DNA of 63,324 nucleotides, counting the filler, from Hyphochytrium catenoides (taxonomy: Eukaryota > Protista > Hyphochytriomycota), in the NCBI GenBank assembly GCA_900088475.1. It is 5 parts of 5 records of this genome, joined end to end, with 100 filler letters (N's around TTAATTAATTAA, not from the genome) between each part and the next. Parts side by side here need not be neighbours in the genome. Positions count along the whole stretch, not along the records: positions 31,038 to 40,429 come from FLMG01002077.1; 4 more parts are not named here. The stretch is one strand, 5' to 3'. Below the pieces are notes generated by a model, which was given only the letters and a program-made list of their open reading frames with translations, ran no database searches and had not been told where the DNA came from. This document shows positions 31,038 to 40,429 of the stretch, one piece after another. Position numbers and translations under genes: made by a program. The number at the start of each line of letters is the position of its first letter. Positions within the stretch are counted from its first letter, which is position 1.

Positions 31038-31950
31038 GGAGTAGACGATTCTGCATCGCTCCCGGCCACGAGCGGCCAACTGCTGACTTAAGTTTTCTTT
31101 CGTCATTGGGCTATATAGGAACTAGGAGCACGGGATCATACAACCACCATGTTGTGGGTGGCTACAGCTCTCTTGGTCCAAACTCCGTCAGCACTACTCC
31201 TATGATGAGCTTTTCTTCTTCAAAATCTTGTTCGCTTCTAATAGCTGCCCCATCCCTGCGGGCTCAACTCAAATCTTCAGCCTTCATCAGCCTCTGTACA
31301 GACCCAAGGATCATTAATTTGGCTAGGTAGCCAGTCTTGCTGCCTGCTGTCGATCACTCATGCCTCAGCTCATGCAACATCAGAACCCTTTACCTGTACC
31401 GTGTCCCATCAGACAGACAGCACCAACAAGCAACACTCACATCATCAGAAGCCTGTACAGTAGGCACTAGCACTTCTCCTCTCCTACATCTTCAGAAGGC
31501 GTTGTACGACGTAGTAACCCTGTGTAAAGGTTTCTTGGCATACGAACAGTAAGAAGGGTAGAACCCAATCGGTTGAGACACTGTACAAGGTTCACTACTT
31601 ACTACTCCGTATCAAACGAGATCCGCACCGCAGCTCTTATCATCATACGGTACAGGTACTGGCAGTAGTGAGTGCAGGGCTGGTGGGCTGCTTCATCAGG
31701 CTGGGCAGTGTTATCCTCAATCAGCCCGTGATCAAGTCCCTAGCCTATAGAGCTTCAGCTCAGTCAACAAGCCGATGGCTCTTGTAAGGCTGAAGGCTTG
31801 GCTGACGGCACAAACGAGTACATGGCATGCATGGTCGAAAGGGCAGATCAATCCTCTTATGATCCAAAGTAGTGCTGTCTCATAATATATTATAAATATT
31901 GGGGAAAATCTAGCAAATGTACATCTGACAGAGTTACAGAACCCGTCAGC

Positions 31951-34020
31951 TCATCGATCGCCATCAAAATATGCCGGCGCCGCTTCTAGACCAACGGCGT
32001 CTGCCGATATTGAGCGATTCCGTTGAGTCTTTGATTGGGACCGAGTAGGGTTCGGATTTCCAGGACTCTGCATGGATGCTGTCGCCACCAGGGGAATCGC
32101 CCGAACAGGAGCAGTAGCAGTAACTGTTATGGTCTGGGCGAAACCGGTCTCGTTAGGCGAAGGCACCTCTGTTAGTTTTTCCTCCTCTTCGCTTTGACCA
32201 TCACCATAGCGTCTTCTATAGCCAAAGTGACCGGTAAACATCATTAGAAGTATGGAGAGGACGGTCACAAATATTCCGCAAGCCGCAGCTATCATCGCCA
32301 CACCCCAAAGGGGCACGGCACTGCCACCTTCGCCTGAAGATTTACTCCTTCGTGAGCCTGGTATATCAGTAATCTCCCCATTCCGGTACTTTGTGATGAG
32401 GTTCTCCAAGCATGGCTGTGCCTCTAGATTGTTGCAAAGGTCACACCATGCCTTATTGGTTAGAGACGTGTTGTCCTGGTTTAATGCAATGCTGAAGTCC
32501 CGCCAGGCACACCACTCCTTCTGGCCTCCAAAAGCTCGACAAACTGAGGAGAGGTCCAAATCTGTAGCGTTGAAACGTGCTAGAAGACTGGGAGACAACT
32601 TGTTCTGCAAGAACTTCATCTAAACGGTGGAAGAGGAGTCAGAATTGCCCAGCGCCAAAACGAAAAACAACATCAAATTACCTTGACGAAGTATGGTCCT
32701 TCATTAGCTCTTTCCGACTCTTCAGTGAGGCCCAGATAATCACCGCAGTCCATCTTAGCCGTCTGATTACAGAAGTGTAGCTAGAGAGTAGAAATGTCTT
32801 CAGCCCAAGTTCGCATGACAGGAAGAGCACCGTTCGTACTGCTCACCTCAATCAGAACCGCTGAGCCATAGTTTGGAAACTGCTGTATCTGGGAATTGTG
32901 GACGTCGAGCTTGAGGGCAGCAAGAATGGAAAGAATGGTCTCAAACCCAGTTGTGTACTGTGAATACTGCAGATCCGTCTGGATAAGTAGTTCATGGCAA
33001 CGACGACAAAGGTTAGCGTCAATCGTGGACAAGCAGAAGCGAATTCACCTACCAGGTTTCCCGATCTGCTTGCACTAACAATGCTCGCAAAGGTGGAGTC
33101 TACATTTCGCAGAAAGGTTCCACCCAACAAGGTACTTGCTGTTTTGCTTGAGTACTTGTTGGAAGCTAGCCAAGACGCAGTCGAATGAAGCCCTTCCCAT
33201 TCTGCCTCCGAAACCTTGGCGGCCGGCGATGTCTGGTTTTGCAGGCGAAGTGAAAACTGGTAATCGTAGAAGGCTAGAAATTCCCTCAGACGTAGCTCTT
33301 TGACATCCGGTGCCCTAGTTAAATAGCAATATCAGCCCCAGCACATCATGGGAATGATCTGATTGACCCTTCCACTTACAACATATCACGCCAGCGGCTT
33401 AGATTTAGACTTAGCTCGTCAGATTTAGACCGAAAGGCTGGAGAAGCATAGAATTGGCTCAAAGATGCGTTGAAGTAACTGTCGCATTTGTCGTAGGCGC
33501 GAAGAAGAATGTCGTTCTTCACATCTCCCGATGACATGATCGGTATGGGAACGGTGTCTGGGAAGATAGAGACTGTAGCATTAAGAAACCCCTGGAAGAA
33601 AGCCCTCCAATACGATACGGCTGAGCTTATGGTGTTTTTCTCGTTTGTAGACACCGCTGTCAATGCTTTCGGATTTATCGTGACTCGAGGAGGATAGTAC
33701 ATCCTCTTAATCTCTCCAGCTAGTGCCTGCATCTGACGTTGTCCTAACAGAGAGACCTGGGAAGACCACTGAGAAGTTATTCAAGGAAGTGAATAGTGTG
33801 TCCTTACCTCGGCGAGGCTTGCCAACTTGTCATCTTTTCTCCAAGAGTCTTCAACGAAGCTGCCGTGTCTATGAACCACTATCAATCCCAGCTGCTTTGG
33901 TCCGTCAAAAAGCGCGGTGGCGGATATATTTACAAAGGAGCCATTCTCTTGCGCAACGACCACAAGCGCTAAAATTGGGAGCAAAACAAGGGTCGCTTGT
34001 AAGTAGGCCATCCTTGGCAT
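31951..34020 (-). CDS. Type I membrane protein with histidine acid phosphatase fold and degenerate active site
   Basis: Signal peptide, VVHRHGS, GQRQMQALA, STNEKNTISSA, ETILSILAAL..FPNYGSAVLIEV, then a TM helix (LWGVAMIAAACGIFVTVLSILLMMF) and cytosolic tail. Confidence 0.78.
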
Positions 34021-34734
34021 GGGCTGGTCAATTGGCCCGTAGGGTAGTTAATGAGGATTGAACACTGCGCTGCTGTGCCAGTCGAAGCTGTTGGGGCCCC
34101 TGGAGTGACGGTGATCAGCTCATGGCAAGCCTATGCTGACAGCCCTGAGATGTATAGCAGCCCCAACAGGAAGAGTGAGGATTAGAACACGGCGAAAGTA
34201 GGTGTTCTCCCCAGTAGCCCTTTTGAGCAAAACCAGCCTGCACCGTTAAGCAAGGAACAGATGCAGTTCACGTGCATCTATGTTGACAGTACGGCTCCTG
34301 CATAATCCTATAATCCGACCAACTTGAAAGAGCTTGACGGCTGGGATGTTAGAAGGCCCCTACCAAACAGAGAAATGCTGATTGATCTGCCAGTAATAAG
34401 GGAGCAGCAAGCAATTTGAAGCTTTTCCGATGTGATAAGAAGAAAGCGTGAGAATGAGGAAAGCTTCATTCTCCCTCAGTTTCTGCCTTCTCCCTCTGTC
34501 CTTCCTTTCTCACTGCATCGCCTCCTTGTTTAGAGGGTGTTGCTTCCCCGGGTAAAGAAAGATTATCTGACAGTTTTGATCAGATAATTCACAGTAATTG
34601 GTGAACTGACACTTGGTGCCCATACATTGACAATGACAACCAATAACAGCAAACTGGTCAATTCATCAAGACCAGAAATTGCAATTGTCAATTCACAGTT
34701 ATCCAACATTACTCCTACCATTGTGAAACTGGCA

Positions 34735-35075
34735 GTTGCCACTTTGCTGAGAGTACGGTCCTTTGGCCATATAATAGACGGAGGATGGGGACTTGGGCAT
34801 GGGTGACGTTTACACAACGACACAATGTAGCCAACACACCTTTTGAAGGTTGGATGACACATTTCTGGGAGGTGTGCGTCTGGGCATCTGAGGAAAGCTC
34901 TTCGAGCAATGAAGAGCCATCACAACAAAGGAAGGAGGAGTTGCTCTCAGCACGCTCCACTTTCTCCATCATCAACTAGCTCACTTGGAATACCTTGGGG
35001 ACGTGATGCCATGGACCGGCTGGACAATAAACTACTCCGTTACATTGCTGCTTGTGGCTTACTAGACGCAACATG
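34735..35075 (+). mobile_element. Possible decayed hAT transposase fragment
   Basis: Frameshifted pieces WMTHFWEVCVWASEE (BED-finger-like end) and AMDRLDNKLLRYIAACGL (resembles the hAT N-terminal helix); AT-rich hairpins upstream at 34562-34588. Confidence 0.35.
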
Positions 35076-35120
35076 GCAACCAGAACCTCCATCCACTCCT
35101 TCTCTGTGCGTGATCATAGT

Positions 35121-36828
35121 CTATCCGCTGCCTCCTTCAATCATCTTACGAATCATCAAAATCTGACCTCCAGCTACCCCAATCAGCACAAAATTCAGTA
35201 GCAATGTGACCCATCCTATGCGGGATTTTCCGCTAGAAATAGCTAACAAAGGAGCAGCACGTAAGTCGCAAAGGGAGGTTTAATGTACGGAAAGCTTGAC
35301 TTACTTTGCTCAGTGACCATGGTGTGATGCTGTAAGTAGGCCATCTCACTTCGAAGGGACCACACTTGGACTGAGAACTCGCCAATCTTCTCCATGACTG
35401 TGTCAGGAGTGTCTAACACGAATCTTTTCAGTCGGCTTCCCATGGAGGTGAGAGATTCTTGAACTAACTAAGAAACGATTACCTTCAATCAAGAGTGCTG
35501 GCCAATAATCTGATGGCGAGTTCCTGGCCGAGCAGTATTTTACCATGACATCCTCAGCTCCAGCGATCTGGAAAAGCATGACTAGTTCAGCCCTCTTCTT
35601 GCTCAATCGAGCAAAAAGCCTATCACAAACGATACTTACAATGACTGTAAGGTCTACACTATTGACATCAATAGCCCTTTGAAAATCTTCCGTGACATCG
35701 ACGACAATACGCTCGTCTTTTTTCACCGTCCATCGGCCCCTTTCTGATTGTGAGGCTAAAGTGTCAACGTTCCTGCGCCACGTGGCAGTTAGAATATGTA
35801 TAGCTCCTGAGGGTCTTGCCATACTAACATTTTAAGAGTATTCCAAGTGAACGGGGCCACCACAGGATAGTGCGCCAGCTTCAGATAATGCTGGGTTGCC
35901 TTCTCTGCTTCATCAACCTGGAGTACCAGGTACGCCCTTTACGTGGGGTCCTAGTTAGCTGCAGGAGCAAGAAGGTAATTTTTTGGCCTACTGTACCTGG
36001 AGTCGTCTTTGACAATGTCTTTGGATATCGCATCGAGCGGGAACTGTAGAACTGCAAGACTTTCTTGGCTGATTCGGAGCTAGGGGTCATGACTCATGTA
36101 ATCTGCGGCATCTATCAACTAGCACAGGTTACGTACCCTTTGACAGGAAGAACTGGCATCACGTTGTACGAGGTATCATCTGGCTCATTTTTAGATATCG
36201 AGCCGTCATACCGCGGCGTTAGCGTCAGAAGGGTGTGACCTGGATAGCAATTAGCACAGATGGCTTAGGATAGGTGGGTTGAGTCAAATGTCTCTGGAGC
36301 GTACCATAGCCAATAGACTGAAGGTCAAATAAAATAGGCAGTTCTGTTCTTGAAGAGTACGACTTGCGAAAGCAAATGGTGTAGACTCCGGTCTCCTTAA
36401 GTCGCTCCTGCAAACTTCCATGAACAGTGGCCTTCCAATGCTGAATAACCTTTCCGTAGGGAGAAAGAACCTTGTATCGGAGAGATAATCGACAAGGCTT
36501 AGGACGAATTAATATTTGCAGAACAGAAAGATATACCTTAGCGTACACCGCCTCGTCAGGTGTCGGGTCGACTATTTCAAAACGAAAGAGGAGTGTGTTC
36601 TTGGATCCAGCACTATCGAAGTGCTGATAGAAACATTGCTTGAGGAATGGGTGAATATTAGAGCGGAGTACTCGGCGGGTGCAGAGCTGTTGTTACCTCT
36701 TGGCTATTTTTAAGGCTCGTCCCTAAGTGTGAGAAAACGACAGCCGGCAGGCAACCAAGGAAGATTGCAAAGATAGGTAGGCCCAACGATGCAGCTTTCC
36801 CGATGGTGATGCTAGTCCTCGACACCAT
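35121..36828 (-). CDS. p24/emp24/TMED family protein with inserted DNRLRE/CBM96-like domain
   Basis: Signal peptide; GOLD domain (EQCFYQHF..VLSPYGKVI..ETGVYTICF..ILFDLQ); insert of about 190 aa; coiled coil (SLRSEMAYLQHH); TM (RIGWVTLLLNFVLIGVAGGQILMIRKMI). Joined through GT-AG introns. Confidence 0.82.
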
Positions 36829-37372
36829 ATTTCCTCGTCGCGCTTGAGGATGGGGCAACCAACTAAGTAGCAAAGAGGAACAATGAATAGTCACCGTAGC
36901 TCATCAATGGGCCAAGGAAGGAGAGTTGGAACCAGACGAGAGTCATAGCTGATGGCAAACTCAGCCCGCCGCCATAGATAGAGCTAGAGAGAGACGTGAC
37001 ACTTCATAATGATCCCAAACCTTATTTACCAAATAGATCACGCGGTACCTAACAAACTGTTGTGCAAATACGGGATCTTATTATTTTGTAAATCGAAATT
37101 AATAAGGTGCTGTTGTTATCTCCGTTTGTTACCCCCAACCCCGGTAAATACCAATGGCGGGTAAACAACACAAACCTCTTCTAACGTGAGCTTGGAACTC
37201 GGCTGTCGGCAAGTCTGCAAGCAGGATGGCGCTTCCTTCTTCACGCACAGGATGAGATCATGCACTGTTTCCTTTTCTCCTTCAAACAACAAAACGCTTC
37301 CCTGCCAAAGCCTTGCGAGTCTGCTGATACTCAATAAGGGAGACAAAGTGGTGGAGTAGAACCGCGAGCTCT

Positions 37373-37943
37373 ATGGATGAAGACGATGAGCGTAGAAAAT
37401 GGAGAGCGTTACTGGCGCCCTTGATCGAGAATCCTGCTCTCTCAGGGGTTCTACTTTTTAGCCACCATGGTCAGGTCAGGAAGCTTCACGCAAGACGACA
37501 ATAGTAGTAGCGGATGTATCTGACAGATTGAGCAGGTCCTCTTCGTCCACGGGTGGTTTGAGAATGTCCACACTTCCTTGCAGAACTTATGTAACGAACG
37601 CTTGCGTTCTGAGTTTCAATTCTATTGGGACGACAACGATAAGAATCAACCAGAAATGGTGGGGTCCACAGATATTGAGATGCTCTCGCCAATGCCACAG
37701 CTAGGCTGTCGGATGGCATTGAGTCAGATCCCAAGATTGACCAATGTGGCCCTCGGCGATCTACATTTCCAGCTTTTCCGCAAACATGGGACAGGGGCTT
37801 TCGCCGTTTCCAGTCGAAGAAGATGCGGACTGACCATCAACCGGACGCAGTCATTCTTTCTGTTTACGAGTTGTCACTGGCCAAACTCAGTCAGACAAGC
37901 AGTTCCCATTGTGGAGAAGTTCATCTACAATCGTCAGTGCTAA
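37373..37943 (+). CDS. Divergent profilin-like protein
   Basis: Exon 1 MDEDDERRKWRALLAPLIENPALSGVLLFSHHGQ; intron 37475-37535; exon 2 ends VALGDLHFQLFRK..GLTINRTQSFFLFT..WPNSVRQAVPIVEKF, matching the profilin pattern. Confidence 0.6.
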
Positions 37944-37993
37944 TAACAATGTATATATATATTATACTTTTAGGTCCAATGTTGGCAATAGAG

Positions 37994-39769
37994 TCAGACC
38001 CTTTCGCCTCTGAGCTGGCACGCCGTGAGGTCTTCTAAGAAGGGGTCTCTAGATTTGAAAGTGAGCCAGCGTCCAGGGCCCTACTATCAGTGTCAGGTAT
38101 GATTTCTACCAAAGCAGCTATAGACCTCTCTTTTTACCTCTGTTTCATAAAACCGTAGCTGTAAACTCCAGGCGTGAAGGCACATTCGGACCGCATCTGA
38201 AGTTGATCGAGCATAGGTGGCATCACCAACTGTCGCCGTGTCATCAGTTTGAGTGGAACTCTGGGTCTTAAGAATTGAGGAGAGCTTACCAATGGGGTAG
38301 CCAACATACTTCATATGCAGTCGGAGCTGGTGCCTCCGCCCAGTTACAGGAACCAATAGCACTTTAGTAACGGGGTTCCCGCCTTGAAGATAGTGACCCA
38401 GTATCCTGACATGCGTGAAGGCATGCTTATATGCGATACATCGAGTGTCAGCTCCCAACTCATGACTGGCATCGCAATAGATGAACTCACTCGACCAGGA
38501 TTTCTGTCATTTCCCACCTCCATGGCAAAGCCACCTTCAGTGTCGTCGGCAACAGGAATCGTAATGCTGAAGTCAAACTGAAGGTAGGTTAGGCTCATTA
38601 CTTACTATGTTTCTAATGCAGTCTCTCACCTTATCATCACCTGTCTGGTCAGCCTCCAGCCCATACTTCTCTTCCGCCTGCCTAGCTTTCATATCTCTAT
38701 GGTATCGTTCCCTAAAAGACGCTTCGTGAGAACTGTTTGGCCGTTGCAGTGCCTGTACAGGCTTACTTGTCCATTGCCGCCTCTTCCACAAACGCTTGCA
38801 CCACTTGAGGACTACGTTCAATGGCCGCCTGCCAGGTTTGTAGAGTCATGATGTCTCTCTGCAGAGCGGTCAGGTTCAAGCCCATGGCACTCCGTCTCTT
38901 TGCTTGCGCGAGCTTCATTTCAAAGAGCTTTGCAGCAGTCCTAGGGCCTACGAGTCGGTGAGGTTCTTTCAGAGGTCGGTTTGGGAACAATCCTCCAACC
39001 TTTGATGCGGGGCCTCTTGTGCCTTTGATTGGACGATGCTGTAGGAGGAGGTGAGGGCTTTTCCGGAGAAAAGTCCAGGGGAATGTGACCTAGGAAGTGA
39101 ACCAGGCAAGATTAGTCATCACTAACGGTGTTAAAAAAGTCAATAGGAGGTACCTTCAACCAAAGCAAGATACTTTTTTACAGTTCTTCGCTCTCTGAAA
39201 AGTCTAGACATCATTCCTGCCGCACTTCATGAAAAAAATTGTAAGTGGCACTTGAGCCCAACCTGGTTATCTATTTGCCATACTTCTTGTTCAAGCCAAT
39301 CAGAAGAACGCCAGACGTAGCTGCAGAGCAACATGAGATGGATCATTTGCCACTTATGAATGGGTTGACTGATAGCGCACCATAATCTAACCGATGTATC
39401 CAATAGAAATTCTCCACCTCAGGGTATCTGCGTTGCAGCTATCACACGGGTCAGGTTCTAAACTTTCAAGATAACAAGTTTTGCCACAAACCTCCTTCTC
39501 TAGTGTCACAGCAAAGTCACCATTCATCCTAAGGTCAAAGGGCTAATTTTTCAGTCAGCAATATTTTGAGCTTGGGCAGAGGTCTATTAAACAGATATGA
39601 CCTTGTTAACCACAACGTAGTCAGCAGTCTCAGCGACGGTCTCAATGTCTAGGTCGGAAAGGGAGCGGATTCCCTGTCTGAGCGTCGACTCGCGTTGCTT
39701 GTTGTCGTCCTCCTCCATTTCAATGTCATGCTGATCTCTTCGGGGCTTAACAGAGCCCTTATCTTCCAT
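37994..39769 (-). CDS. RluA-family RNA pseudouridine synthase (RPUSD1-like) with large insertion
   Basis: YVVVNKPFDLRM, IHRLDYATSGVLL, KKYLALVEG, PVTGRRHQLRLHM..GYPIVGDATY, RMCLHAWSL. Confidence 0.92.
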
Positions 39770-40151
39770 CTTGCCAAATAAGGTAGAGGGTGAGATAGTA
39801 GGGTGCTGGCTAATAGAGACCACTTCCAAAATAGCGACGAGTACACGTCGCTAGCTACAACGGGCTTGTGTGCACATTACATTGCTATAACGAAACGGAT
39901 GGTGTCCTTACTCTTCTGGTCCCACCATTTCGCTATTTCTATGATGTCTCTTGAAAATTTGGATTTCTTGGTATGTGTACGCAAATAATCTGCCATCATG
40001 GGAAACGGTATTGGCTATCATCAGTGTGGGCTCTGAGCTCTGAGGCTCTGATTATATATTCTCATGATTGATGATGATGAATCTGAAATAATAACACCAC
40101 TGATCTCTGATTTCTGATCTCCACATGTACCACAGAGGACCAAGGGCCTCC

Positions 40152-40238
40152 CTGTTATAACGTGGTTATGCCCATGTCATTGCCATGCCAAAATACTGTT
40201 ACAGGGTGGTGTCGGGACATGTCATTGCCATGCCAAAA
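40152..40238. repeat. Degenerate tandem repeat (about 45-bp unit, 21-bp identical core)
   Basis: catgtcattgccatgccaaaa at 40173-40193 and 40218-40238, each preceded by ctgtta. Confidence 0.85.
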
Positions 40239-40429
40239 CTGAAGACGGCTTTGGAGGAGCAGAACGCGTTGAACTGTATACAGGGTTCTAAGTTGCCGCC
40301 CGATACGCACCTCTCGTACATAGTAGATAGACCTTACGTATCTGGCTCGATGGTGCGGCGATTAAATGGCGCCTTCGATAATTTAAAGGTCTAAAAAACC
40401 CGACTGGCCACTCTCTCTAAGATAGGAGC

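What the first reader, a model, noticed from the sequence alone, without database searches (positions are those of the whole stretch)
35121..36828. p24/TMED cargo receptor carrying a DNRLRE/CBM96-like glycan-binding domain
Seen in sequence: after splicing, an insert of about 190 aa (roughly 36240-35485) sits between the GOLD domain and the coiled coil/TM. It reads TLTPRYDGSISKNEPDDTSY..LPVKGQESLAVLQFPLDAIS..SRAYLVLQV..FTWNT..RWTV..IVVDVTEDFQRA..VKYCSARN..WPALLIE. Established: p24 proteins are about 24 kDa with no such insert. This motif order (D..I....P..Y, L.V.G, L.F.L..I, A.L.L, TWN, DVT, S, P.L.I) is typical of mostly prokaryotic DNRLRE/CBM96 beta-sandwich modules, some of which bind alginate. 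Inference: a lectin-equipped p24 that may sort polysaccharide or glycoprotein cargo between ER and Golgi, possibly built from a horizontally acquired domain that has since gained introns. The ORF track misses it because it is split over several short exons.
Basis: partly seen in the sequence, partly recalled or inferred. Interest (0 to 1): 0.8.

Follow-up and report, generated by a model that had tools for sequence, protein, structure and literature searches.

The report
p24-like receptor with embedded CBM96-like domain
An intron-rich soil eukaryote (probably a fungus) has a gene for an ER-Golgi p24/TMED-type membrane protein with a roughly 166-residue domain, distantly related to bacterial CBM96/DNRLRE carbohydrate-binding modules, spliced in between its GOLD head and its membrane-proximal helix; I found no report of this combination.

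Summary
A 10-exon minus-strand gene (36828..35121, all introns GT..AG, 56-72 nt) reads as one 376-aa ORF: a signal-type N-terminus, a GOLD domain, a 166-aa insert (exons 4-8, 36239..35483), a helical stalk, one TM and a 9-aa tail.

- **Splicing:** public RNA contigs confirm introns 1, 2, 6 and 7. The two junctions that tie the insert to the p24 parts (introns 3 and 8) are not covered.
- **p24 identity:** Pfam EMP24_GP25L hits exon 3 and exon 10 in collinear order. The only PDB hits are TMED5/TMED1, and 29 of 30 named Atlas clusters are EMP24.
- **Insert, exon by exon:** nothing matches it in Pfam, NCBIfam, PDB or 1.84 billion representative proteins.
- **Insert, joined:** the joined model was built only inside the sandbox. 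Against a profile of 138 verified CBM96/DNRLRE domains it scores 22.9 bits (E 3e-9 as a single test), end to end. The best of 2000 shuffles scores 8.6. hhalign gives 92% probability, and the native exon order is the best of 120.

So the CBM96-like reading is supported as remote homology. Glycan binding, the cargo role and a horizontal origin remain untested. The fold could not be predicted because the joined protein has no reference. No orthologue was found. This is a new variant of a known kind.

The parts
36697..36828 (-). Exon 1: start codon (36828) and an N-terminal hydrophobic, signal-type segment (aa 1-44; hydrophobic core about aa 13-33)
   Evidence: Reading; hydropathy. The donor at 36696 is confirmed by RNA contig X2.
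36537..36638 (-). Exon 2: N-terminal strands of the GOLD domain, with the first conserved Cys (C46)
   Evidence: Both borders are fixed by the spliced RNA contig in X2 (joints 36638/36697 and 36470/36537).
36305..36470 (-). Exon 3: core of the GOLD domain (second Cys C111 in a YTICF motif; ends ...LFDLQSIGY-G); followed by a phase-1 intron
   Evidence: Pfam EMP24_GP25L 23.7 bits, E 5.8e-5, profile 37-96. TMED5/TMED1 are the only PDB hits. Atlas EMP24 clusters score 0.91.
36137..36239 (-). Exon 4: start of the insert (family positions D145 and P153 retained; L-P-V-K-G strand)
   Evidence: Aligned to CBM96 profile positions about 26-60; conserved columns.
35997..36068 (-). Exon 5: insert, the 'LQFPLD' strand (family motif 'likFdLs')
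   Evidence: F177 and L179 retained.
35829..35936 (-). Exon 6: insert, 'AYLVLQV' (family 'AtLrLy') and the T-W-N motif; the family's W-x-E is missing
   Evidence: A193, L195, L197, T222-W223-N224. The 3' end is joined to E7 in RNA contig X3.
35640..35772 (-). Exon 7: insert, the D-V-T motif (D253-V254-T255)
   Evidence: Covered end to end by a spliced 151-nt metatranscriptome contig (X3).
35483..35567 (-). Exon 8: end of the insert (S285, then ...W-P-A-L-L-I-E, the family's 'rP.L.v' last strand); followed by a phase-1 intron
   Evidence: S285, P295, L297. The 5' end is joined to E7 in X3.
35305..35412 (-). Exon 9: membrane-proximal helical stalk of the p24 part
   Evidence: By eye (not tool-tested), the residue pattern matches the p24 stalk; acidic, pI 4.97. 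No Pfam hit on its own.
35121..35242 (-). Exon 10: transmembrane helix (about aa 347-368, with the G-G-Q of p24 TM helices), a 9-aa tail RKMIEGGSG and the stop codon
   Evidence: Pfam EMP24_GP25L 15.9 bits, E 0.014, profile 152-181 of 182; hydropathy.

Best explanation
The gene encodes a type-I membrane protein of the p24/TMED (EMP24/GP25L) kind.

**Architecture (shown).** It has a signal-type N-terminus, a luminal GOLD domain with the two usual cysteines, a helical stalk, one C-terminal TM helix and a very short cytosolic tail. A 166-aa module is inserted exactly between the GOLD domain and the stalk. This module is a distant homologue of the prokaryote-dominated CBM96/DNRLRE domain (solved examples 7VBO and 8WAB, a beta-sandwich). 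It is encoded by five exons that form a 501-nt block bounded by two phase-1 introns, which looks like a module inserted into a pre-existing p24 intron. At least part of the gene is expressed and spliced.

**Function (inferred).** The protein sits in the early secretory pathway. It probably forms hetero-oligomers with ordinary p24 proteins, because its own tail lacks the FF and dibasic coat signals. The extra luminal beta-sandwich would serve as a second ligand-binding surface for cargo. A glycan ligand is plausible by family analogy but untested, and alginate-type binding is unlikely because the module is acidic.

I give about 0.8 to the architecture and the CBM96 homology, and about 0.3 to a lectin-type cargo role.
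For: - **Gene model:** one 376-codon ORF over 10 exons, all introns GT..AG and 56-72 nt.
- **Splicing:** introns 1 and 2 (X2) and 6 and 7 (X3) are seen removed in public RNA contigs.
- **p24 ends:** Pfam EMP24_GP25L hits exon 3 (profile 37-96, 23.7 bits) and exon 10 (profile 152-181, 15.9 bits). TMED5 and TMED1 are the only PDB hits of the GOLD piece. 29 of 30 named Atlas clusters are EMP24.
- **Topology:** two hydrophobic segments at aa 13-33 and 347-368, and Cys46/Cys111 in the GOLD domain.
- **Reference family:** 120 prokaryotic loci were fetched with the motif W-x-E-x-x-V-T-W-N-N. All 10 tested are Pfam CBM96 and NCBIfam DNRLRE_dom. They link to 7VBO and 8WAB.
- **First profile (97 domains):** 15.5 bits, E 5e-7, profile 23-196 aligned to aa 139-307. 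None of 2000 shuffles reaches this (best 6.9), and only 2 of 1132 non-CBM96 ORFs score 10 bits or more.
- **Second profile (138 domains):** 22.9 bits, E 2.9e-9, best shuffle 8.6.
- **hhalign:** 91.7% probability, P 7.7e-7, 151 aligned columns. The native exon order is the best of 120 permutations.
- **Conserved columns:** 16 identical and 6 similar residues at the 37 most conserved family columns.
Against: - Exon by exon, the insert matches nothing: Pfam and NCBIfam, PDB, and the custom profile (1.3 bits or less). The homology therefore rests entirely on the joined model, which was scored only in the sandbox against a home-made profile. The official Pfam threshold (26 bits) could not be tested.
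- The family's W-x-E and N-x-G motifs are lost.
- No RNA contig spans E3-E4 or E8-E9, so linkage of the insert and the p24 parts on one mRNA is inferred.
- Both Pfam p24 hits are below the gathering score individually.
- The cytosolic tail RKMIEGGSG lacks the FF/KKxx signals.
- The insert is acidic, unlike the basic alginate groove of TM6-N4 (PMC9971899).
- No orthologue was found, so there is no conservation evidence.
Confidence: 0.65

Rival explanations
1. Cassette or nested-exon reading. The main product is an ordinary 209-aa p24 made by splicing E3 directly to E9. That junction stays in frame, because both flanking introns are phase 1. Exons 4-8 would then be an alternatively spliced cassette or part of another transcript.
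For: Introns 3 and 8 are both phase 1 and the block is 501 nt, which is 167 codons. No RNA contig covers the E3-E4 or E8-E9 junctions. X1 contigs cross introns 6 and 7 unspliced.
Against: - E6-E7-E8 are spliced precisely in a metatranscriptome contig, so they are real exons.
- They have no start codon, signal peptide or stop of their own.
- Skipping them would require an 892-nt intron, in a gene whose nine introns are 56-72 nt.
- A luminal or extracellular-type domain fits the luminal position in the joined model.
Confidence: 0.15
2. The insert is a lineage-specific beta-rich spacer with no true relation to CBM96/DNRLRE. The motif order would be a chance resemblance picked out by eye.
For: - No official family, PDB or database search sees any exon of the insert.
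- Pairwise phmmer against CBM96 domains is not significant (best E 0.65).
- Identity to bacterial domains is only 16-20%.
- The hallmark W-x-E and N-x-G motifs are absent.
Against: - The profile score of 22.9 bits is far above 2000 shuffles (best 8.6), the reversed sequence (-0.1) and about 1130 unrelated real ORFs from loci rich in beta-sandwich modules.
- The alignment is end to end and collinear, and the native exon order is the best of 120.
- hhalign gives 91.7%.
- 7 of the 9 best-scoring ORFs in the pairwise search are CBM96-positive, and 6 of those hits overlap the mapped domain; such ORFs are 9% of the set.
Confidence: 0.12
3. The module is CBM96-related but is not a lectin. It would bind protein, or simply lengthen or oligomerise the luminal part. 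The TGF-beta prodomain arm, the closest structural relative of CBM96, binds a protein in this way.
For: - The insert has pI 4.85 and lacks the basic groove described for alginate binding (PMC9971899).
- Most DNRLRE domains have no known function (PMC9971899).
Against: The family's only characterised member binds a polysaccharide, and many members sit in polysaccharide lyases (PMC9971899). From my own knowledge, not tested here: p24 complexes have been reported to recognise the glycan part of remodelled GPI anchors.
Confidence: 0.35
4. A decaying or non-functional lineage-specific gene: an orphan p24 paralogue on its way to loss.
For: The GOLD domain is very divergent, with Pfam hits below the gathering score and no word-search relatives. 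The coat-binding tail motifs are lost. No orthologues were found.
Against: The ORF is intact across 10 exons and nine correctly phased introns. Transcribed and spliced forms appear in runs from at least two studies. Both GOLD cysteines and the TM G-G-Q are kept.
Confidence: 0.05

Closest known systems
p24 / TMED / EMP24-GP25L family (for example human TMED5 and TMED1, yeast Emp24/Erv25)
   Same: Signal peptide, a luminal GOLD domain with two Cys, a helical stalk, a single C-terminal TM helix with a conserved Gln, and a very short cytosolic tail. Pfam EMP24_GP25L hits lie at both ends. TMED5/TMED1 are the best PDB hits.
   Different: - It is 376 aa rather than about 200-230.
- A 166-aa extra domain sits between the GOLD domain and the stalk.
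- The tail RKMIEGGSG has no FF or dibasic coat motif.
- The GOLD domain is so divergent that each Pfam hit is below the gathering score and the word search finds no relatives.
CBM96 / DNRLRE domain (Pfam PF24517, NCBIfam NF033679; structures 7VBO and 8WAB)
   Same: Length is about 165 aa, with an end-to-end collinear profile alignment. The D..I...P start, F-x-L strand, A-x-L-x-L strand, T-W-N, D-V-T, and S...P-x-L last strand are retained.
   Different: - It sits in a eukaryotic, intron-split gene and is embedded inside another protein.
- The W-x-E and N-x-G motifs are missing.
- It is acidic rather than basic.
- It reaches 22.9 bits on a home-made profile; the official threshold was not testable.
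- No ligand is known.
Lectin-type cargo receptors of the early secretory pathway (ERGIC-53/LMAN1, VIP36, yeast Emp46/Emp47). These comparisons rest on my own knowledge and were not tested here.
   Same: A type-I membrane protein with a luminal beta-sandwich sugar-binding domain and a short cytosolic tail. This is the functional analogy that the lectin reading implies.
   Different: Those receptors use an L-type (legume-like) lectin fold, have no GOLD domain and carry clear coat-binding tails. There is no sequence relation.
TGF-beta propeptide arm domain (PF00688)
   Different: It is metazoan and binds a protein ligand. No direct match to the insert was tested or seen.

Membership tests
p24/TMED (EMP24_GP25L, PF01105) | Profile match to the family model | tested here: inconclusive
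   Exon 3 piece: 23.7 bits, E 5.8e-5. Exon 10: 15.9 bits, E 0.014. The two hits are collinear (profile 37-96 and 152-181). Each is below the 25.9-bit gathering score; a rough sum would pass. The joined protein could not be scanned.
p24/TMED (EMP24_GP25L, PF01105) | N-terminal signal sequence plus a single C-terminal TM helix (type-I topology), with the conserved Gln in the TM | tested here: met
   Kyte-Doolittle peaks occur only at aa 6-39 and 345-368; the TM contains G-G-Q.
p24/TMED (EMP24_GP25L, PF01105) | Luminal GOLD domain with two conserved cysteines | tested here: met
   C46 (QCFY) and C111 (YTICF). PDB hits are to the TMED5/TMED1 GOLD domains only. 29 of 30 named Atlas clusters are EMP24.
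p24/TMED (EMP24_GP25L, PF01105) | Short cytosolic tail with di-aromatic (FF) and/or dibasic COPII/COPI signals | tested here: not met
   The tail is RKMIEGGSG: short, but with M-I in place of F-F and no K-K-x-x.
p24/TMED (EMP24_GP25L, PF01105) | Size of about 24 kDa, with the GOLD domain directly followed by the coiled-coil stalk | tested here: not met
   376 aa, with a 166-aa insert between the GOLD domain and the stalk.
CBM96 / DNRLRE domain | Significant profile match over the whole domain | tested here: met
CBM96 / DNRLRE domain | Hallmark motifs (D-x-x-[IV], N-Y-G, F-D-L-S, A-x-L-x-L, W-x-E-x-x-V-T-W-N-N, D-V-T, S-x-E...P-x-L) | tested here: inconclusive
   16 identical and 6 similar residues at 37 strongly conserved columns. 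T-W-N, D-V-T, A-x-L-x-L, F-x-L and P-x-L are kept. W-x-E, N-x-G and the second N are lost. The seeds were chosen by the W-x-E...T-W-N-N motif, so those columns are over-weighted.
CBM96 / DNRLRE domain | Beta-sandwich fold as in 7VBO/8WAB | not testable with these tools
   The joined insert has no reference, so it could not be given to structure prediction or fold search. The seeds do link to 7VBO and 8WAB by sequence.
CBM96 / DNRLRE domain | Carbohydrate (alginate) binding through a basic groove | tested here: inconclusive
   The insert has pI 4.85, with 17 K+R against 25 D+E. The TM6-N4 groove is positively charged (PMC9971899).

The most novel reading that the evidence does not exclude
A eukaryote built a new kind of cargo receptor by inserting a prokaryote-type CBM96 module, as a phase 1-1 exon block, into the intron between the GOLD domain and the stalk of a p24 gene. 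The result would be a p24 with a built-in lectin that selects polysaccharide or glycoconjugate cargo (cell-wall precursors or GPI-glycans) for ER-Golgi transport.
Probability: 0.2. Interest if true: 0.75.

Novelty: new variant of a known kind. Interest (0 to 1): 0.55.

Why it matters
p24/TMED proteins are abundant and conserved, and it is still poorly understood how they choose cargo. From my own knowledge, their architecture is very uniform. A natural p24 with an extra luminal module from a carbohydrate-binding family would be the first member whose ligand-recognition surface is a separable domain. That domain could be expressed alone, put on glycan arrays, swapped or deleted, which gives a direct experimental handle on p24 cargo selection. 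It would also be a clean example of module insertion between two phase-1 introns, in a family I know only as single-architecture. Three things limit its weight: it is one gene in an unidentified soil eukaryote, it has no detected orthologues, and its ligand is unknown.

Tried and rejected
- **Exon-wise family scans:** Pfam and NCBIfam on all insert exons gave no hits.
- **Exhaustive phmmer:** the E7+intron7+E8 piece against 1.84 billion representatives gave only three hits. These are repeat proteins (FG-GAP, Myb) matched on a short G-R-W-T/V-K-x-D-E string, so I treat them as spurious. Not even a self-hit appeared.
- **JGI metagenome/metatranscriptome scans:** run with the insert piece and with exon 3; no relatives.
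- **Word search with the GOLD piece (85-271 aa window):** none. Orthologues of about 376 aa lie outside the length window of any stop-free reference in this gene, so they could not be searched.
- **Exact look-ups of two window ORFs:** not on record.
- **Atlas with the insert piece:** no usable hit.
- **PDB with insert pieces:** only chance antibody and lectin strings.
- **Phage seed:** BUCT551 gp18, annotated 'DNRLRE domain-containing protein', was fetched as a family seed, but Pfam and PDB show a collagen-repeat protein, so I dropped it.
- **Custom profile on the six-frame fragments of the piece:** insert exons score 1.3 bits or less, no better than noise.
- **Organism:** not identified. The run names are coded, and the neighbouring pseudouridine-synthase exons are too short for the length window.

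Steps left out because the joined 376-aa protein has no reference: Pfam/NCBIfam/PDB scans, the large protein searches, and structure prediction and fold search of the spliced product.

Full report
**Anatomy.** The piece (31038-40429) has about 47% G+C and no long ORFs, which fits an intron-rich eukaryote. I read the minus strand between 36900 and 35050 in three frames. This gives ten exons:

| Exon | Coordinates |
|---|---|
| E1 | 36828-36697 |
| E2 | 36638-36537 |
| E3 | 36470-36305 |
| E4 | 36239-36137 |
| E5 | 36068-35997 |
| E6 | 35936-35829 |
| E7 | 35772-35640 |
| E8 | 35567-35483 |
| E9 | 35412-35305 |
| E10 | 35242-35121 |

Joined inside a sandbox script, they form a 1131-nt CDS of 376 codons with no internal stop. 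All nine introns are GT..AG and 56-72 nt long. Stops in the neighbouring frames leave almost no freedom in where the borders can lie.

**RNA support.** Three public runs hold parts of the stretch. When laid on the window, they show the following:
- One contig of run X2 (coded organism A, depth 15.6) runs E1-E2-E3 with both introns removed. It moved my first guess for the E2 acceptor from 36623 to 36638.
- One 151-nt contig of a soil metatranscriptome (X3) covers E7 exactly (133 nt). It carries loose ends of 8 and 10 nt. Reverse-complemented, these are the last 8 nt of E6 and the first 10 nt of E8. Introns 6 and 7 are therefore removed as modelled, and the insert exons are real exons.
- Two X1 contigs cross introns 6 and 7 unspliced, which could be pre-mRNA or DNA.
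- No contig covers introns 3, 4, 5, 8 or 9. That the insert and the p24 parts lie on one mRNA is therefore inferred from frame, spacing and the lack of any start or stop within E4-E8. It is not shown.

**The p24 frame.** Several results agree:
- Pfam EMP24_GP25L hits the E2-intron2-E3 piece (23.7 bits, E 5.8e-5, profile 37-96) and E10 (15.9 bits, E 0.014, profile 152-181 of 182). Each hit is below the 25.9-bit gathering score, but the two are collinear and sit at the right ends.
- The only PDB sequences that match the GOLD piece, weakly, are TMED5 and TMED1.
- 29 of the 30 nearest named ESM-Atlas clusters are EMP24 families, with a top score of 0.91.
- The product has exactly two hydrophobic segments (aa 13-33 and 347-368). 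It has two Cys in the GOLD part (C46, C111) and a G-G-Q in the TM.
- Its 9-aa tail, RKMIEGGSG, lacks the FF and dibasic coat signals.

The GOLD domain is very divergent. A word search restricted to it found no relatives of 85-271 aa.

**The insert.** Exons 4-8 (36239-35483, 501 nt, aa 135-300) sit between the last GOLD strand (...LFDLQSIGY) and the stalk. Both flanking introns are phase 1. The block is therefore a symmetric 1-1 module, and splicing E3 directly to E9 would leave an in-frame 209-aa canonical p24.

Exon by exon, nothing recognises the insert. I tried Pfam and NCBIfam, PDB and the Atlas. An exhaustive phmmer of the E7-intron7-E8 piece against 1.84 billion representatives returned only three repeat-driven spurious hits and no self-hit.

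**Testing the CBM96/DNRLRE idea.** No family member was available by reference. I therefore scanned the prokaryotic genome collection for DNA encoding W-x-E-x-x-V-T-W-N-N, which I recalled as the family's core motif.
My own rough estimate of the chance expectation is about 35 for the whole collection.
- All 10 ORFs I checked are Pfam CBM96 (37-161 bits) and NCBIfam DNRLRE_dom (72-127 bits).
- Two of them match the solved CBM96 structure 7VBO and the DNRLRE structure 8WAB by sequence.

In the sandbox I built a profile from 97 domain windows. Against the joined model it gives 15.5 bits, E 5e-7 for a single comparison, with profile 23-196 aligned to aa 139-307, which is the whole insert and nothing else. 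The controls were:
- None of 2000 shuffles reaches this score (best 6.9), and the reversed sequence scores -0.2.
- Of 1132 ORFs of at least 166 aa from the same loci that are not CBM96, only two score 10 bits or more (12.9 and 22.8). These loci are rich in other beta-sandwich modules.

A second profile from all 138 domain copies raises the score to 22.9 bits (E 2.9e-9; times about 25,000 Pfam families this is still about 7e-5). Here the best shuffle is 8.6, and only one unrelated ORF scores between 10 and 25 bits. Further checks:
- hhalign of the single insert sequence against that alignment gives 91.7% probability, P 7.7e-7, over 151 columns. The native order of the five exon pieces is the best of all 120 permutations (21.9 bits against a median of 5.5).
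- At the 37 columns where at least half of the family shares one residue, the insert is identical at 16 and similar at 6.
- Kept: D145, P153, F177, L179, A193, L195, L197, T222-W223-N224, D253-V254-T255, S285, P295, L297.
- Lost: the N-x-G and W-x-E motifs.

**Caveats on this test.**
- The signal exists only in the joined model. Single exons score 1.3 bits or less.
- The profile is home-made, and its seeds were chosen by one motif.
- The hypothesis came from the same sequence features that the profile scores.
- Pairwise similarity to any one bacterial domain is not significant (best E 0.65). Even so, 7 of the 9 best-scoring ORFs are CBM96-positive, and 6 of those hits overlap the mapped domain; such ORFs are 9% of the set.

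I take remote homology to CBM96/DNRLRE as well supported (about 0.8). The beta-sandwich fold follows from that homology and was not tested.

**Function.** The CBM96 founder (TM6-N4 of an alginate lyase, 7VBO) binds alginate in a basic groove. The wider DNRLRE family has mostly unknown function, and its nearest structural relatives are TGF-beta prodomains (PMC9971899). The insert here is acidic (pI 4.85), so alginate-type binding is unlikely. The ligand may be another glycan or a protein. CBM96 is not strictly prokaryotic: a diatom protein with this domain has been reported (PMC12028343). The library holds 13 papers mentioning CBM96 and 13 mentioning DNRLRE; none of the titles listed (10 for each term) concerns p24, and a search pairing emp24 with carbohydrate-binding modules found no such fusion.

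The most likely mechanism is a p24-like subunit in the ER-Golgi shuttle that adds a second luminal binding module. It would depend on partner p24 proteins for coat binding, because its own tail has no such signals. This mechanism is inference.

**Origin.** Identity to bacterial domains is 16-20%. No donor and no orthologue were found. The module holds four introns and is bounded by two phase-1 introns. This fits insertion of a module into an existing intron. It says nothing about whether the source was prokaryotic.

**What was left out.** The joined protein has no reference. It was therefore not sent to Pfam, NCBIfam, PDB, the large protein searches, AlphaFold or fold search. The join was made only inside sandbox scripts. 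Orthologues of about 376 aa could not be searched for, because every stop-free reference in this gene is too short for the length window. The organism remains unidentified.

Noticed in passing
window 38090-39850, minus strand: The upstream neighbour is a multi-exon RluA-type pseudouridine synthase gene. Pfam PseudoU_synth_2 hits the ORF at 38096-38458 (E 4.7e-5). The translated frames show the H-R-L-D catalytic motif near 39440 and a K-K-Y-L-A-L-V-E-G motif near 39200. I did not build an exon model.
   Followed up: partly
window 31951-32619, minus strand: A 222-aa uninterrupted ORF with one internal hydrophobic segment and a Ser/Thr/Pro-rich C-terminal half. It has no Pfam family and no exact record in the public gene collection.
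   Followed up: partly
window 36471-36536 and 35568-35639 (introns 2 and 7): Both introns are multiples of three (66 and 72 nt) with no stop in frame, so retaining them would keep the reading frame. Contigs from an RNA library (X1) cross intron 7 whole and part of intron 6 (35773-35811) unspliced.
   Followed up: no
window 36240-36304 and 35413-35482 (introns 3 and 8): Both introns flanking the 501-nt insert block are phase 1. Skipping exons 4-8 would give an in-frame 209-aa protein of canonical p24 size. This fits module insertion and allows cassette-type alternative splicing.
   Followed up: partly
L001:292-942 (Aeromonas phage BUCT551, NC_052986.1, gp18): This protein is annotated 'DNRLRE domain-containing protein', but Pfam sees only collagen triple-helix repeats and the PDB matches are all collagens. 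The annotation looks wrong.
   Followed up: yes
L002-L121 (prokaryotic loci): The DNA pattern for W-x-E-x-x-V-T-W-N-N is a very specific handle for CBM96/DNRLRE domains: all 10 ORFs checked are members. Four of the ten checked ORFs (MAGs labelled Bacteroidia, Bacteroidota and Fluviicola) carry T9SS sorting tails. One (L020, Lentzea) is fused to a purple-acid-phosphatase-like metallophosphatase. Two give weak Pfam TGFb_propeptide hits.
   Followed up: partly
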